Shown one piece after another: positions 13,506 to 24,940 of a DNA stretch of 47,976 nucleotides. Numbering within the stretch: position 1 is the stretch's first letter; each line of letters opens with the position of its first letter. The translations under genes and the position numbers were made by a program. The notes beneath the pieces are model-generated. The model was not told the DNA's origin, searched no databases, and saw nothing but the letters and a program-made list of their open reading frames with translations. Source of the stretch: Octopus bimaculoides (Eukaryota); NCBI RefSeq assembly GCF_001194135.2, contig NC_068981.1, positions 102,928,219 to 102,976,194 of the forward strand, in the 5' to 3' direction.

Positions 13506-14604
13506 TGAAGAGCTGTTTTCCTGGGGTTATAACAACAGTAACATCGTCTTATATAGGACTACCACATTCTGTTGGCATATAAACATTACTACCCGGTANN
13601 NNNNNNNNNNNNNNNNNNNNNNNNNNNNNNNNNNNNNNNNNNNNNNNNNNNNNNNNNNNNNNNNNNNNNNNNNNNNNNNNNNNNNNNNNNNNNNNNNNNN
13701 NNNNNNNNNNNNNNNNNNNNNNNNNNNNNNNNNNNNNNNNNNNNNNNNNNNNNNNNNNNNNNNNNNNNNNNNNNNNNNNNNNNNNNNNNNNNNNNNNNNN
13801 NNNNNNNNNNNNNNNNNNNNNNNNNNNNNNNNNNNNNNNNNNNNNNNNNNNNNNNNNNNNNNNNNNNNNNNNNNNNNNNNNNNNNNNNNNNNNNNNNNNN
13901 NNNNNNNNNNNNNNNNNNNNNNNNNNNNNNNNNNNNNNNNNNNNNNNNNNNNNNNNNNNNNNNNNNNNNNNNNNNNNNNNNNNNNNNNNNNNNNNNNNNN
14001 NNNNNNNNNNNNNNNNNNNNNNNNNNNNNNNNNNNNNNNNNNNNNNNNNNNNNNNNNNNNNNNNNNNNNNNNNNNNNNNNNNNNNNNNNNNNNNNNNNNN
14101 NNNNNNNNNNNNNNNNNNNNNNNNNNNNNNNNNNNNNNNNNNNNNNNNNNNNNNNNNNNNNNNNNNNNNNNNNNNNNNNNNNNNNNNNNNNNNNNNNNNN
14201 NNNNNNNNNNNNNNNNNNNNNNNNNNNNNNNNNNNNNNNNNNNNNNNNNNNNNNNNNNNNNNNNNNNNNNNNNNNNNNNNNNNNNNNNNNNNNNNNNNNN
14301 NNNNNNNNNNNNNNNNNNNNNNNNNNNNNNNNNNNNNNNNNNNNNNNNNNNNNNNNNNNNNNNNNNNNNNNNNNNNNNNNNNNNNNNNNNNNNNNNNNNN
14401 NNNNNNNNNNNNNNAGTTAAATTTTATGCATTTATTAAGTATAATATACATATATATATATCAACGTATCAACCGACATTTATGTTGCATTATGTTTATG
14501 ATTGAGATGATTGTGAGAAATCTGCATGACTTTTACTCACACACGTATACACACGCACACGCACGAACACACACTCAACCACTCGAAATGCATATACGTA
14601 CACA

Positions 14605-14734
14605 TAATTTATCGACCCCGAAAGGATGAAAGGCAAAGTCGGCCTCGGCGGAATTTGAACTCAGAACGTAGACAGACGAAATACCGACAAGCATTTCGCC
14701 CGGTGTGCCAACGTTCCTGCCACCTCGCCGCCTT
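14605..14734 (-). mobile_element. Family A SINE, head and core only
   Basis: taatttatcgaccccgaaaggatgaaaggcaaagtc...gaatttgaactcagaacgta...cctcgccgcctt matches the other family A copies. Confidence 0.9.
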
Positions 14735-15194: not shown

Positions 15195-17905
15195 ATACAT
15201 ACATTTTAAAATTACAATTCGTAAAACAAGTCGCTATTCTCTCGAAGCTTTCGTTGAGCAACAGATCATTCCTAACAAAAGTGAGAAAAAATCCGTCCGA
15301 TCTAATGTTTAAAGTTATCAACGATGTCACTAGAGAACACATACAATCATGTGAGGTCAATTACAGGAATATAAATACTCTTGTATATACACAGTCGCTA
15401 TAACTCTTAAAGAACACCTAGGAGAAATCTACAGTGAACAAAGTAACGAAATTATTAAATGGAAACAACCTAAATGGAAAACAAAATTTGAAGAATGGTT
15501 AACTACAACAAAATGTAAGGAGCAAAATGAGTTTACACCTCACGAACTCTACCATAGACAAAAATTAATGAAACTGGCAACTCTTCACAACGAGCTCTTG
15601 AGGGAAAACTAATCACTTTAAAACAGGAACTCAGGAGGATGAGCGAAAAACTCCGCTATCGCATGCAAAGTTTTGAACGAGCCAGTATCAATCGCAAGTT
15701 TGCTTCCAACCCACAAGCATTATAGAGAGAGATGAGGAAGGAAAACGTTACCATTAAGGAAGCTCCCTCTCAAGAAGATCTTCAATCATTCTGGTCAAAA
15801 ATTTGGAACGATAAAAGGGATTTCAACATGAATGCAGCATGGTTAAATACAATTGAGAGAGAATACTGTAAAAAAAAAAGCATACAAAATTGATGCAGAA
15901 ACCTTCGCTGTAGTAGGAGGCAAACTGCCTACTACTATAGGAAGGCACCTGGAAAGGACCTAATAGTTGGATATTGGTACAAGAAACTGACATTTTATAG
16001 AAACCAGTTGATATATATGTTCAAAAGGACTATGAAAGGTCACACTGATATACCAAATTGGATTGCTATATCAAGGATAAATCTTGTTGCCAAAAATGAA
16101 ATCACCGTGATGGCAGGAAACTACAGGCCCATTGCTTGCCTAAACATTATGTACAAACTGTACACAAGTTGCCGCAACTAATTCCTTCAGGACCATTGTG
16201 AGTCGAACAACATTGTGACTGATGAAGAGGCTGGTGGAAAGAAGGGAGTGTTGGGATGTGCCGAACAACTTTTAATAAACAAAGCTGTACTGTTTGAAGT
16301 AAGAAAACAGCGTAGAAACCTTGTGACAGTATGGTTTGATTATAAGAAGGCATTCGATTCTATCCCTCATTCATGGCTGTTGAAGTGCCTACATCTGGCA
16401 AAGTACCCACTACCTTAATTGCTGCTATACAGAGACTCATAAAGACATGGACAACAATTCTCACCCTTCCAACTGAGAGCAAAATAATTGTTTCAGATAC
16501 GAAAGGCATTTCAAAGGGAATATTCCAGGGAAATAGTCTTTCTGTACTTCTTTTCATTTTGGCACTGAATCCGTTATCGTTCCTACTGCAGAAAACAAAC
16601 GGTTACGTTCTAGGATCTTCAACTGCTAGAAATATCAATGCAACTCATAATTTCCTTGTAGACGACCTCAAGATTTATGCTAAAAGTGTTTGCAATGCCA
16701 AAAAGCAACTGGAATTAAAAACAACATTTTCAGCTAATATAGGCATAGAATTTGGCCAAAATTGTTCATATTTGGTTATAGAACGAGGAAATTCAACCCC
16801 CAAACCCCAAACCTGTGCATCAACGGTCACTTTATCTTCCCCATTCCACACAAAGGCATAGATGAAAATGTATCATATGAAGGCACATTTTTGGCAACAA
16901 GATTTGTCCTTGATATAGCAATCCAATTTGGTATATCAGTGTGACCTTTCATAGTCCTTTTGAACATATATATCAACTGGTCTCTATAAAATGTCAGCTT
17001 CTTGTACTCTATAAAGATAGAGTGACCCGAAAATATTACACCAGACTTAGGAAAATATGGCAGTCGGAACTCTCCTCATACAACAAAACAATATCCCACA
17101 ATGAATTTGCAGTACCAGTGCTGATCCCAACATTTGGGATACTTGTTTGGTCTGTAGAGGAAATCCACTCCATAGATATCAAAACCTGCAATATCCTGAC
17201 ATCAACTTGGAAGTTCCACAGAAACAGTGATGTGCACAGGTCCTACTTGAGAAGAAATGAAGGTGGTAGGGGCCTGAGATCAGTGCAGACGACCTTCGAA
17301 TGCCGTATGCTATCACTCAGGCAGCACCTGTTGAACAACAACAGCAAAAATAAATATATAAATGCAGTGCTGGAAAGTGAACTGAGAAACATCGTATGAG
17401 TTGGCAGTGAGCTCCTCAAGAATCACTCTCTTCCTGATGATCTATACAGCCCCAAATCAGCTGGGCTCTCTTACCCCATACAAAACCTGGATGGAAAGCA
17501 CTCAGCATACAAAAACAAGATTATATGTGGGTATGTTGCCCGGAAGCTTCAAGAAGACAGTAGAATTGACACGAAGTGTAGCCTCTCTTGGACACAAGGC
17601 CACTACATCACATCACACTTTGAAGGCTATGCGTTTGCAATCCAGGAACAGGAGATTGCAACAAAGTACATATGAAGAAGAGAGACAGTGTCACTCTTGT
17701 AATCCCAAANNNNNNNNNNAACAAAGTACATATGAAGAAGAGAGACAGTGTCACTCTTGTAATCCCAAAGTGCAACCGCATGTGTAGGCTATGTCATGTT
17801 TCTGTGGAAGACATCATGCATGTGATTAGCAGCTGTCCTAAAATGTCGTCAGGGTACTACCTCTCTATGCGGCACGATGTTGTTGCTAAAACAATTTACA
17901 ACGCA
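15195..17905 (+). mobile_element. R4/Dong-like LINE with decayed reverse transcriptase and CCHC finger, 3'-truncated before the RLE
   Basis: NYRPIACLNIMYKLYT, DYKKAFDSIPHSW, GIFQGNSLSVLLF, HNFLVDDLKIY (RT catalytic motif), RSYLRRNEGGRGL, EGYAFAIQEQEI, CRLCHVSVEDIMHVISSC, RHDVVAK. Contains stops and frameshifts. Confidence 0.92.
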
Positions 17906-21543: not shown

Positions 21544-21751
21544 CGAGGAGGTTCTGAAAAGTTCCTGGTTTTAAGGGTATCGCTGTAGGCCTAGTTGGCG
21601 GGCCAAACCTCCGATTTCTTATACAGGTCTTAGAAAAACTCAAGGGCATAAGTGAGTGAATCTGAGAGGAGAACATGTTGCATAAAGTCATAATTAACTG
21701 ATCCTCCCGTAAATTCTTTTACACAAAGCTAGGAACTTTTCAGCATCCCTC
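21544..21751. mobile_element. Mariner/Tc1-type MITE (about 210 bp)
   Basis: Left end (ta)cgaggaggttctgaaaagttcctggttt and right end aaagctaggaacttttcagcatccctc form imperfect TIRs of about 28 bp. TA is present at the left end; the right terminus is decayed. No ORF. Confidence 0.7.
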
Positions 21752-22056
21752 AAAACAAAAGACTGGAAAAATTCGGTATATTTTTAATTCCGTGTTACAC
21801 ATGTTTCATCACAGGATAGGAGTTACAAAAACATACATGCTGGTAACAATAATAGATATTATTTGTTAATCTTTGCCTAGAGAATTACGGACAGGAGAAA
21901 CTCGTATCATGTAATTCGTATACGTGTAACGTGGAATTACAAATATACTAAATATTTTCAGTCTTTTGTTTTGGTATGTAATTACTCTGCAAATGGAATT
22001 CACCAGAAATTTCAAATTTGCCTCATTTAAAACAAACATCTAACATTTGATTACCG

Positions 22057-22121
<65 letters not shown>

Positions 22122-22761
22122 CGTGCATGCATNNNNNNNNNNTCTATCTATCTATCTATCCGTGCATGCATGCATGCATGCATCCATCCATATGTACATA
22201 CATACATACATACATACATACACACATATAATGAACCACAATAAACTTGTGATATAGGTAGAAATAATACTCAAATGTTCAGCTGTCTTTTTTTTGCCAC
22301 AAAAAGAAAGAAGAAAGGGGTGGAAGGGGGTTAACATTCATGCATTGGATTCTCTTTAAGATGAAAATTAGCAAAAATCTATATATTTGGTAAGGGGAAG
22401 GACAAAGACTTTTGAGTTGTCCAGAGGAAATGAATATGAAGCTATTCGTTCCATCAGGAGTATACAAAAATTGTTCTATAAAAATATTTAAAAAATCTAT
22501 GTCATATGTTTGCAATGCATCAGGTATGTTAACAGGGAATAGTACTAATGATCCAAGGTAGGACGAGTGAAGGATAGGGTAAGATGCTAGCACATTATGT
22601 CAGGTTTAGAGCTGCTGTCTATAATGAATTATTAAGAAGGATTATCTGCAATAGCCTCGGCCATGTCTTCAGTAGCAGTGCACAGCCAAATTTATGAGCA
22701 ACACTGCTAAATTAAAGAGAAAGTAACATGTGATGTGTAGTCATGTAACTGTCCTATGTGA

Positions 22762-23678
22762 TCAAGGAGAGGATGATGTTGATGTGACTTCTTCTGGGGA
22801 TCTGTCAGGAGTGTACGATAACGACATTAATGCATCGGTTGACACTTCTTTCTTATCACTTTGTGAAGGGGTTAATAATATAGCTGATGAACAGGATCTG
22901 TATCATATTACATTGTTGATTTCAGTTCAGCTTCTCTCAAATGTGCCTTTTCCCAGAAATCTAGATCAACAGCATGTGTTTGAGCATTGTGACTATCATC
23001 AATATGCACCGTTGAAATAAACTTCAGTTCTACTGGACATGCTTCGCGAAGTATAATAGCATAGGGGTTCATCCACTGTATGTAAGGAATCAAATCAGCC
23101 GTGGATAATCCTGACACTGCTAATGCGACAGACTTGGAAGCCATATGATACAAAGCTGAGGACGCTATATCATTGCTTTTAAAGCGCAGACAAGAAATGT
23201 CTAACGTACACAAATCTATTAAGCGAGTTACATTTGAGGAATATTGTGAGAAGACAAAACCATCTTCAGCTATTTTACCAGCATTAACAAGCTGAAGGTA
23301 GATATTTAACCAAGCAGTCACTGTCATTGGAGACAAATCCCAGCTCAAGTACCTTTAGCATAACTAGTTCTTGGTTGAAAATCTCTGCATCATAACAAGC
23401 ACCATCACTGACATAAGCAAAATCGGAGAGTTTTGGAGGATAAACTTCCTCCAACTTGACTGCAATAAACAGTGAAGTGATTCCTATAAATTGAAGTTGC
23501 TGTTTAATCACTCACTTTTCATTTGACAAATAACGATCTGTAAAATCGAGTGATAAATAGTAGGTCTTTCGATGTAACTTATATAAGCCAATTTAATAAA
23601 ATTGCCCTCATCTTATACCGTAAAAAGGGATGCCGATCCAATATACGTAGATCTTCAGTATAATTGTGTTCTTTTTCC

Positions 23679-23680
<2 letters not shown>
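22762..23680 (-). pseudogene. CCNE: Cyclin E processed pseudogene (5'-truncated, intronless, disabled)
   Basis: HPFLRYKMRAILLNWL / YKLHRKTYYLSLDFTDRY / [35 protein letters not shown] / [17 protein letters not shown] / LIDLCTLDISCLRF / IQWMNPYAIILRE / DSHNAQTH / ILLTPSQSDKK are colinear with metazoan cyclin E. Lesions: frameshifting deletion at about 23584, TGA at 23512-23514, +1 base at about 23346, TAA at 22908-22910. Confidence 0.93.
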
Positions 23681-23757
<77 letters not shown>

Positions 23758-24090
23758 NNNNNNNNNNNNNNNNNNNNNNNNNNNNNNNNNNNNNNNNNNN
23801 NNNNNNNNNNNNNNNNNNNNNNNNNNNNNNNNNNNNNNNNNNNNNNNNNNNNNNNNNNNNNNNNNNNNNNNNNNNNNNNNNNNNNNNNNNNNNNNNNNNN
23901 NNNNNNNNNNNNNNNNNNNNNNNNNNNNNNNNNNNNNNNNNNNNNNNNNNNNNNNNNNNNNNNNNNNNNNNNNNNNNNNNNNNNNNNNNNNNNNNNNNNN
24001 NNNNNNNNNNNNNNNNNNNNNNNNNNNNNNNNNNNNNNNNNNNNNNNNNNNNNNNNNNNNNNNNNNNNNNNNNNNNNNNNNNNNNNNNNN

Positions 24091-24143
<53 letters not shown>

Positions 24144-24269: not shown

Positions 24270-24940
24270 TAAAGTACTAATGACTTACAGGACTGAGAAG
24301 TAATCATGTCATATGATGCGTCTTTCATTAACCACATCACTAAACTGACCTCTAAATGCAGACATCTCATAGGCTGGATCCTATGAAACTTTGTGATAAG
24401 AGAACGGCAGTTATGTTGACACTATGGAAAATCTTAGGCCTGAGCAAATTAGATTACTACTTCCAGTTTTGGTCGCCAAATTCATCCTATCTCATATTAG
24501 AGACTGAAGGATTACAAAGAACATTCACCAGTAAAATGACTTCAGTTAAAAACCTTAATTACTAGGAACATCTGAAAGCTCTGCATCACTACTCTCTGGA
24601 ATACTGAAGCGGGAGATAGACTATCATATACGTATGGGAAATCCTGGAGAGGTTGGCATAAGAGAGAATTTTAACACACGGACTGGTAGATACTGTCCGT
24701 TAGCTTCGTAATATACCACCTTCTAAATTACGAGCAAAAACACACAATTGTACCAGTCCGATATTTAGAGGTCCTCAATTGTCCAATTGCCTACATAAGA
24801 AGACAGAAATATAATAAGTACTTCTACTGAAACATTCAGAAAAATGTTGGATAAACTCCTGATGACGAAGCCGGACCAGCCAACCATTCAAGGGTGCACT
24901 CAGCTACAATTCAACCATAGACCAATTTTCAACCATAAAG
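24270..24940 (+). mobile_element. CR1-clade LINE 3' fragment, degenerate
   Basis: ASFINHITKLTSKCRHLIGWIL, VMLTLWKILGLSKLDYYFQFWSP, EGLQRTFTSKMTSVKNLNY*EHLKAL, FRGPQL, FRKMLDKLLMTKPDQP match the CR1/L2-type ORF2 end. Confidence 0.85.

What the first reader, a model, noticed from the sequence alone, without database searches (positions are those of the whole stretch)
22762..23680. Cyclin E retrocopy: the only host-gene-derived sequence in the window
Seen: about 920 bp on the minus strand translate, across three frames, into the cyclin box (MRAILL.WL, KLEE.YPPK) and C-terminal fold of cyclin E with no introns, frameshifts at about 23584 (loss of the IEVCEV-equivalent) and about 23346, and stops at 23512 and 22908. 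Established: vertebrate CCNE genes carry several introns across this region. Inference: an mRNA retrocopy made in trans by a LINE and 5'-truncated at a (TG)n tract. Only RTE, CR1, R4/Dong and PLE elements are visible locally, so which machinery copied a cell-cycle mRNA is an open question. Its existence implies germline or early-embryo expression of the parent.
Basis: partly seen in the sequence, partly recalled or inferred. Interest (0 to 1): 0.7.

Follow-up and report, generated by a model that had tools for sequence, protein, structure and literature searches.

The report
Dead cyclin E retrocopy in octopus
This is an old, broken, intron-free copy of the octopus cyclin E messenger RNA that was pasted back into the genome about 20 million years ago and has decayed freely since, which is an ordinary kind of genomic fossil.

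Summary
Window 23682..22225 (minus strand) is one uninterrupted copy of the spliced cyclin E (CCNE) mRNA of an octopus, not of a vertebrate.

The CCNE genes of Octopus sinensis, O. bimaculoides and Argonauta hians have introns at identical positions. Six of them fall inside the copied part. Five exon-exon joins are exact in the window, and the sixth lies inside a 17-nt deletion.

The copy carries two premature stops, three frameshifting indels and a 12-nt in-frame deletion. Substitutions private to it are 11 synonymous and 44 non-synonymous (omega about 1.1; omega of 0.5 or less rejected, P=0.008), and they are spread evenly over the codon positions. So it was dead on or near arrival. Its private branch (JC 0.07-0.08) puts its origin near the O. 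sinensis/O. bimaculoides split, about 19-22 Myr ago on a published octopus calibration.

No poly(A) tail and no target-site duplication can be seen. Both ends run into microsatellites and assembly gaps, so LINE agency is inferred, not shown. L1-Tx1 LINEs are reported in Octopus. Verdict: an ordinary processed pseudogene of low interest.

The parts
22765..23682 (-). CDS-derived part of the retrocopy. It corresponds to parent cyclin E codons ~123-438 (exon 4 partial through exon 10) and has no introns.
   Evidence: blastn to the spliced O. sinensis mRNA is a single HSP covering 23682-22225. tblastn with P0001 hits three frames.
23585..23586 (-). 17-nt deletion (frameshift 1). It removes codons IEVCEV and spans the exon 4/5 junction. 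It is flanked by TAT microhomology.
   Evidence: Alignment and junction map.
23512..23514 (-). Premature stop codon, TGT(Cys)>TGA.
23348..23348 (-). 1-nt insertion (frameshift 2), 4-5 nt downstream of the exact exon 6/7 join at 23353|23352.
23230..23231 (-). 12-nt in-frame deletion (loss of VYIQ).
22908..22910 (-). Premature stop codon, CAA(Gln)>TAA.
22896..22897 (-). 1-nt deletion (frameshift 3).
   Evidence: tblastn changes frame here.
22762..22764 (-). Original cyclin E stop codon (TGA), conserved with the parents.
22225..22761 (-). 3'UTR-derived part. It corresponds to the first ~495 nt of the parent 3'UTR, at about 87-89% identity over aligned sites.
23680..24141 (.). 5' boundary. A (TG)n/(AC)n microsatellite (23680-23757 and 24091-24141) is interrupted by a 333-N assembly gap (23758-24090). 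No cyclin E homology lies beyond it.
22058..22228 (.). 3' boundary. A compound tetranucleotide microsatellite, (TGTA)n(TGGA)n(TGCA)n(GATA)n on the minus strand, contains a 10-N gap (22133-22142). The two sides of that gap carry the same motif. There is no poly(A).
   Evidence: No parent 3'UTR homology lies beyond it.

Best explanation
This is a processed pseudogene (retrocopy) of the octopod cyclin E gene.

Proposed history:
1. A fully spliced CCNE mRNA, present in a germline or early embryonic cell, was reverse-transcribed. The cDNA was inserted at a locus unlinked to the parent gene.
2. The most likely agent is the endonuclease/reverse transcriptase of an autonomous LINE acting in trans. Incomplete copying of the 5' end left a copy that starts at codon ~123 and so lacks a promoter and a start codon.
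3. The copy was non-functional from the start. It has since accumulated substitutions and indels at the neutral rate for roughly 20 Myr.
4. Microsatellites now occupy both of its ends.

Shown directly:
- derivation from spliced mRNA;
- an unlinked locus;
- 5' truncation;
- disablement and neutral evolution;
- approximate age.

Inferred:
- the LINE as agent;
- the cell type in which it happened;
- whether the truncations at the two ends are primary or came later.
For: - Cyclin E identity.
- Parent genes in O. sinensis (L001), O. bimaculoides (L004) and Argonauta hians (L002/L003) have coding-exon junctions at amino acids 27, 45, 156, 205, 237, 284, 321.3 and 374. Introns are 94-1622 bp long.
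- The window aligns in one piece to the spliced mRNA. Against the genomic loci it aligns only to exons.
- Five exon-exon joins are exact: 23449|23448, 23353|23352, 23223|23222, 23111|23110 and 22953|22952.
- The parent's neighbours (BtpA-like and prefoldin-like genes) are absent from the window.
- There are two stops and three frameshifts.
- Private substitutions are 11 synonymous and 44 non-synonymous, against a neutral N/S site ratio of 3.54. Omega is about 1.13, and omega=0.5 is rejected at P=0.008.
- Private substitutions by codon position are 14/25/16. On the Argonauta gene branch they are 32/13/90.
- The private branch is JC 0.07-0.08. The copy forms an unresolved three-way split with O. 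sinensis and O. bimaculoides and lacks the lineage-specific UTR indels of both.
- On the calibration quoted in PMC13282606 (JC 0.09 = 25 My) this is about 19-22 My. The same paper quotes 13-33 My for the O. vulgaris/O. bimaculoides split.
Against: - The two classical footprints of LINE-mediated retroposition are missing.
- There is no poly(A) tract. Homology stops about 495 nt into the 3'UTR, at a point with no AATAAA in the parents.
- No target-site duplication adjoining the copy was found. The best flank repeat is 12 nt at 92% and does not adjoin the copy.
- The copy sits on a 1.6-kb contig (22143-23757) bounded by two scaffold gaps.
- The species of the window is not known, so the true parent locus in the same genome was not seen.
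Confidence: 0.9

Rival explanations
1. The mRNA origin is the same but the agent differs. Possibilities are a cDNA fragment made by a non-L1 'stringent' LINE (RTE, CR1 or Dong/R4) through template switching or priming on a microsatellite-type tail, a cDNA made by an LTR or Penelope-like reverse transcriptase, or a cDNA captured during double-strand-break repair. Any of these would explain the lack of poly(A) and the 3' truncation inside the UTR.
For: - There is no poly(A), and the copy ends inside the 3'UTR directly against (TGTA)n(TGGA)n(TGCA)n(GATA)n.
- No target-site duplication was found.
- RTE, Dong-R4 and CR1 are the abundant recently active LINEs in O. vulgaris.
Against: - Microsatellites occur about once per kb throughout the window: about 50 separate arrays (70 TRF rows) in 48 kb. 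Abutting one is weak evidence.
- No LINE 3' fragment lies between the copy and the repeats.
- No repeat family in the window shares sequence next to (GATA)n or (TGTA)n arrays.
- About 20 Myr of decay plus microsatellite growth can erase an A-tail and a target-site duplication.
- L1-Tx1 LINEs exist in Octopus.
Confidence: 0.15
2. It is a functional or recently functional retrogene, or a truncated cyclin-like protein or regulatory RNA, rather than dead DNA.
For: A 146-codon ORF (22908-23348) covers much of the C-terminal cyclin fold. Transcription was not tested.
Against: - There is no start codon or N-terminus.
- There are two stops and three frameshifts.
- Omega is about 1.1 over the whole private branch, with no third-position bias.
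- No protein matching this ORF is on record.
Confidence: 0.03
3. It is an assembly artefact: cDNA contamination, a misplaced contig, or a real exon set damaged by sequencing errors.
For: The copy lies on a 1.6-kb contig between two N-gaps in a very gappy draft with 14 gaps in 48 kb.
Against: - A contaminating cDNA would have an intact frame and selection-shaped differences. This copy differs by about 10% from both Octopus parents, with a neutral pattern and several disabling lesions.
- The two sides of the 10-N gap carry the same (TATC)nCGTGCATGCAT motif. The contig ends therefore overlap and the join to the 3' flank is probably real.
- Sequencing errors cannot remove six introns.
Confidence: 0.03

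Closest known systems
LINE-mediated processed pseudogenes (retrocopies), as described for mammalian L1
   Same: It is an intronless copy of a spliced mRNA of a multi-exon gene. It lies at an unlinked locus, is 5'-truncated, includes 3'UTR, lacks a promoter, carries stops and frameshifts, and evolves neutrally.
   Different: No poly(A) tail and no target-site duplication are visible. The 3' end lies inside the UTR, not at a polyadenylation site. The host is an octopus, whose dominant LINEs are RTE, Dong-R4 and CR1, with L1-Tx1 also reported (PMC13282606).
Octopod G1/S-specific cyclin-E gene (O. sinensis XP_029635699, O. bimaculoides XP_014778229)
   Same: Identity is 80-82% at the amino-acid level and about 90% at the nucleotide level over codons 123-438. 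The 3'UTR is about 87-89% identical over aligned sites. The cyclin box motif MRAILL.WL, KLEE.YPPK and the C-terminal LLTP.QS motif are recognisable.
   Different: The first 122 codons and all introns are missing. The frame is broken five times. It is not in the BtpA-CCNE-prefoldin synteny block. It shows no purifying selection.
Functional retrogenes (for example retrogene replacement, as for amphioxus SYCP1, PMC5803294)
   Same: The origin is the same: reverse transcription of an mRNA.
   Different: There is no intact ORF and no sign of selection, and the parent gene is retained in all three octopod genomes examined.

Membership tests
Processed pseudogene / retrocopy | Collinear homology to the spliced mRNA of a parent gene that has introns in that region, with all introns absent | tested here: met
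   Six parent introns fall in the copied part, at conserved positions in three octopods. Five exact exon-exon joins are present, and one junction lies inside a 17-nt deletion.
Processed pseudogene / retrocopy | Located away from the parent locus | tested here: met
   In all parent loci CCNE is flanked by BtpA-like and prefoldin-like genes. Neither these genes nor any parent intron sequence occurs in the 48-kb window. The parent in the window's own species was not seen.
Processed pseudogene / retrocopy | 3' poly(A) tract at the end of the copied mRNA | tested here: not met
   Homology ends at 22225, about 495 nt into the 3'UTR, against tetranucleotide microsatellites. There is no A-run, and no homology resumes beyond the repeats.
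Processed pseudogene / retrocopy | Target-site duplications flanking the insert | tested here: inconclusive
   No flank repeat adjoins the copy. The best is 12 nt (21998-22009 and 24523-24534) and lies tens to hundreds of nt from the ends. Both ends are masked by microsatellites and gaps.
Processed pseudogene / retrocopy | Disablements and neutral evolution (needed for the 'pseudogene' label) | tested here: met
   There are two stops and three frameshifts. Omega is about 1.13, with omega of 0.5 or less rejected at P=0.008. Changes are even over the codon positions.
Cyclin E subfamily (origin of the sequence) | Cyclin N- and C-terminal folds, with closest similarity to cyclin E rather than cyclin A, B or D | tested here: met
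   Pfam Cyclin_N scores 2.7e-29 and Cyclin_C 5.7e-4 (20.3 bits, below the 22-bit cutoff). In the PDB, cyclin E1 scores 3e-74, cyclin A2 4e-22 and cyclin D1 5e-12. The named hits are cyclin E, apart from one hypothetical Capitella protein.
Functional retrogene | Intact ORF under purifying selection | tested here: not met
L1-type (poly(A)-dependent) trans-mobilisation | A-tail, a target-site duplication of about 7-20 bp, and an insertion at a TT/AAAA-like site | tested here: inconclusive
   None of these is visible. Age, microsatellites and gaps could have erased them. The presence of L1-Tx1 in Octopus comes from the literature only.

The most novel reading that the evidence does not exclude
The copy was not made by a poly(A)-recognising L1-type element. 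It was made instead by one of the 'stringent' octopus LINEs (RTE, CR1 or Dong/R4), by template switching onto, or microsatellite-primed initiation within, the CCNE 3'UTR. The missing A-tail and the tetranucleotide repeats at the 3' end would then be primary footprints. That would make the locus an example of mRNA retroposition by LINE clades thought to be poor at it.
Probability: 0.1. Interest if true: 0.45.

Novelty: new member of a known kind. Interest (0 to 1): 0.12.

Why it matters
It matters little on its own. Processed pseudogenes occur in most animal genomes, and this one shows no sign of function.

It has three modest uses:
1. It is a clean neutral-rate marker of about 1.46 kb, dated near the O. 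sinensis/O. bimaculoides split.
2. It shows that spliced host mRNAs were reverse-transcribed and integrated in the octopus germline about 20 Myr ago. My two searches found no paper that deals with octopus retrocopies or processed pseudogenes.
3. A genome-wide census of such copies and their 3' ends could show which octopus LINE clade can act in trans.

The copy shows no excess of A>G changes, so it is not a fossil of RNA editing.

Tried and rejected
1. Frameshifts as alternative-splicing footprints. Two lesions lie at or next to exon junctions: the 17-nt deletion over E4/E5 and the +1 nt 4-5 nt after E6/E7. Neither fits a GT/AG alternative site, and the deletion is flanked by TAT microhomology. 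I treat this as coincidence.

2. An RNA-editing fossil. Private A>G changes number 9, against 9 T>C, 8 G>A and 8 C>T. There is no excess.

3. Homology resuming after the 3' microsatellite, which would give a hidden tail or polyadenylation site. Local alignment scores of 24-32 fall within the shuffled range, whose maximum is 33-35. Rejected.

4. A target-site duplication. Only a non-adjacent 12-mer was found.

5. Microsatellites as a shared TE tail. Self-comparison of the window shows no repeat family adjoining the (GATA)n or (TGTA)n arrays.

6. Finding the copy or its orthologue elsewhere. No protein closer than the 80%-identical parent gene appeared in the 5.8-billion-protein search. An exact look-up of the 139-aa ORF found nothing. 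The O. vulgaris protein P0016 is not on record for DNA retrieval.

7. tRNA and Rfam scans of the window found nothing.

8. Pfam scans of 20 other ORFs gave only a decayed reverse transcriptase at 16182-16858 and sub-threshold chance-level hits.

9. I ran no further search on classifying the local LINE fragments. Local elements do not bear on which enzyme acted in trans about 20 Myr ago.

Full report
**1. The observation**

The minus strand of 22762-23680 translates across three frames into a cyclin. A frame-repaired conceptual protein matches Pfam Cyclin_N (E=2.7e-29) and, just below its cutoff, Cyclin_C. It matches solved human cyclin E1 at E=3e-74, far better than cyclin A2 (4e-22), B1 or D1.

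In a search of 5.8 billion proteins the best hit is G1/S-specific cyclin-E of Octopus sinensis (E=5e-145, 80% identity). Next come Argonauta hians (72%), decapodiform cephalopods (50-57%) and other molluscs. The window is therefore from an octopod, not a vertebrate. It is a gappy draft with 14 N-runs, 36% G+C and about 50 separate microsatellite arrays in 48 kb.

**2. The parent gene and its introns**

I fetched the genomic loci that encode cyclin E in three species:
- O. sinensis (L001);
- O. bimaculoides (L004);
- Argonauta hians (L002 and L003).

I mapped the exons so that each spliced CDS translates exactly to the annotated protein. All the loci have coding-exon junctions at amino acids 27, 45, 156, 205, 237, 284, 321.3 and 374. 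All lie between a BtpA-like gene and a prefoldin-like gene. Six introns (94-1622 bp) fall within codons 123-438.

**3. What the window holds**

blastn of the window against the spliced O. sinensis mRNA plus downstream DNA gives a single alignment, window 23682..22225. Against the genomic loci, only the exons match, collinearly. No intron or neighbouring-gene sequence matches.

Five exon-exon joins are exact in the window: 23449|23448, 23353|23352, 23223|23222, 23111|23110 and 22953|22952. The sixth (exon 4/5) lies inside a 17-nt deletion.

The copy therefore comprises codons ~123-438, the original stop codon at 22764-22762, and the first ~495 nt of the parent 3'UTR (22761-22225).

**4. Lesions**

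- 17-nt deletion at 23586|23585 (loss of IEVCEV, frameshift).
- TGT>TGA at 23514-23512.
- +1 nt at about 23348 (frameshift).
- 12-nt in-frame deletion at 23231|23230.
- CAA>TAA at 22910-22908.
- -1 nt at 22897|22896 (frameshift).

Two of the indels lie at or beside exon junctions. Neither fits an alternative GT/AG site, so I treat this as coincidence.

**5. Mode of evolution**

In a four-way alignment (window copy, O. sinensis, O. bimaculoides, Argonauta), 55 CDS substitutions are private to the window copy. By codon position they fall 14/25/16. On the Argonauta gene branch the figures are 32/13/90.

By type, 11 are synonymous and 44 non-synonymous, two of them nonsense. The neutral N/S site ratio is 3.54, so omega is about 1.13. 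Omega=0.5 is rejected at P=0.008 and omega=0.2 at P=6e-9. The real genes show non-synonymous/synonymous counts of 5/7, 7/9 and 43/92, which correspond to omega of about 0.13-0.22.

The copy has been free of protein-level constraint for essentially its whole separate history. There is no A>G excess, so it does not record RNA editing.

**6. Age**

- JC distances in the CDS are 0.107 (copy to O. sinensis), 0.108 (copy to O. bimaculoides) and 0.054 (between the two parents). In the UTR they are 0.140, 0.120 and 0.125.
- Three-point branch lengths give the copy a private branch of about 0.08 (CDS) or 0.07 (UTR).
- Informative sites do not resolve whether the copy groups with either Octopus species (6, 6 and 8 in the CDS).
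- The copy lacks both the O. bimaculoides-specific 23-nt UTR deletion and the O. sinensis-specific UTR deletions.

The copy thus arose near or before the split of those species.

With the calibration quoted in PMC13282606 (JC 0.09 = 25 My, JC 0.2 = 56 My), the branch corresponds to about 19-22 My. The same paper cites 13.3-33.5 My for the O. vulgaris/O. bimaculoides split.

**7. Ends of the copy and the mechanism**

At the 5' end, homology starts directly against a (TG)n tract (23680-23757). That tract is interrupted by a 333-N gap and resumes at 24091-24141. No N-terminal cyclin E sequence occurs anywhere else in the window. The copy is therefore 5'-truncated. A little more sequence could still be hidden in the gap.

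At the 3' end, homology stops at 22225, at a point where the parents have no polyadenylation signal. It runs into (TGTA)n(TGGA)n(TGCA)n(GATA)n, a 10-N gap and more (GATA)n. Beyond the repeats, no parent UTR homology resumes.

There is no poly(A), and no target-site duplication adjoins the copy. The two sides of the 10-N gap carry the same motif, so the contig ends overlap and the join to the flank is probably genuine.

An mRNA origin is demonstrated. LINE-mediated target-primed reverse transcription is the standard explanation and the one I favour. It is inferred, not shown.

Microsatellites are so dense here, about one per kb, that abutting them carries little weight. Twenty million years of decay can also erase an A-tail and a target-site duplication.

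This is weaker than it looks. The enzyme acts in trans, and L1-Tx1 LINEs (13 recently active families) are reported in O. vulgaris (PMC13282606).

**8. Rivals**

- A non-L1 or non-LINE route from the same mRNA (template switching, LTR or Penelope-like reverse transcriptase, cDNA capture at a break) stays open at about 0.15.
- A functional retrogene is excluded by the lesions and by omega of about 1.
- An assembly artefact or cDNA contamination is excluded by the neutral 10% divergence, the disabling lesions and the overlapping contig ends.

**9. Comparison with what is known, and verdict**

The sequence meets the defining features of a processed pseudogene:
- no introns, against a parent that has them;
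- an unlinked locus;
- disablement;
- neutral evolution.

The poly(A) test is not met and the target-site duplication test is inconclusive, so assignment to classical L1-type retroposition is left open. It is a new member of a very well known kind. Two literature searches found no paper that deals with octopus retrocopies or processed pseudogenes. That makes it a small data point for that clade, not a surprise. Interest is low.

Noticed in passing
window 1594-1978, 3211-3424, 14602-14734, 46060-46287, 46619-46811(-): A SINE-like interspersed repeat family of about 150-235 bp, at 73-89% identity between copies. Two units lie in tandem at 1594-1978. One copy (3211-3424) is bracketed by (AAC)n and (ATA)n arrays. 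No tRNA-like head was detected by ARAGORN.
   Followed up: partly
window 26840-27214 and 45375-45746: A 378-bp direct repeat, 92% identical, with the copies 18.5 kb apart. Its ORFs have no Pfam match. It is an unclassified element or a segmental duplicate.
   Followed up: partly
window 15894-17672 (+): A decayed reverse-transcriptase region. Two ORFs hit Pfam RVT_1 below the cutoff. A 122-bp inverted duplicate lies at 15977-16098 / 17007-16886 (97.5% identical). The LINE or PLE clade was not determined.
   Followed up: partly
window 22133-22142 (10-N gap) and 23758-24090 (333-N gap): Both gaps that bound the 1.6-kb contig holding the retrocopy lie inside microsatellites. The 10-N gap has the same (TATC)nCGTGCATGCAT motif on both sides, which suggests overlapping contig ends rather than missing sequence.
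   Followed up: partly
window 21751-21800 / 21924-21973: A 50-nt inverted repeat, 86% complementary, with a 123-nt spacer. It looks like a MITE and lies about 85 nt beyond the microsatellites on the retrocopy's 3' side.
   Followed up: no
whole window: Microsatellite density is extreme: about 50 separate arrays (70 TRF rows) in 48 kb, mostly (CA)n, (TATC)n, (TGTA)n and (ATA)n. There are also 14 assembly gaps.
   Followed up: no
L002 and L003 (Argonauta hians GCA_054771915.1, two different scaffolds): The whole BtpA-CCNE-prefoldin block is present twice, with an identical CCNE protein and nearly identical intron lengths. This is either an uncollapsed haplotype or a recent large duplication.
   Followed up: no
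window 37793-38021 vs L001 12341-12567: An interspersed repeat is shared between the window and the O. sinensis CCNE flank (71% over 240 bp). It is probably a common octopus TE.
   Followed up: no
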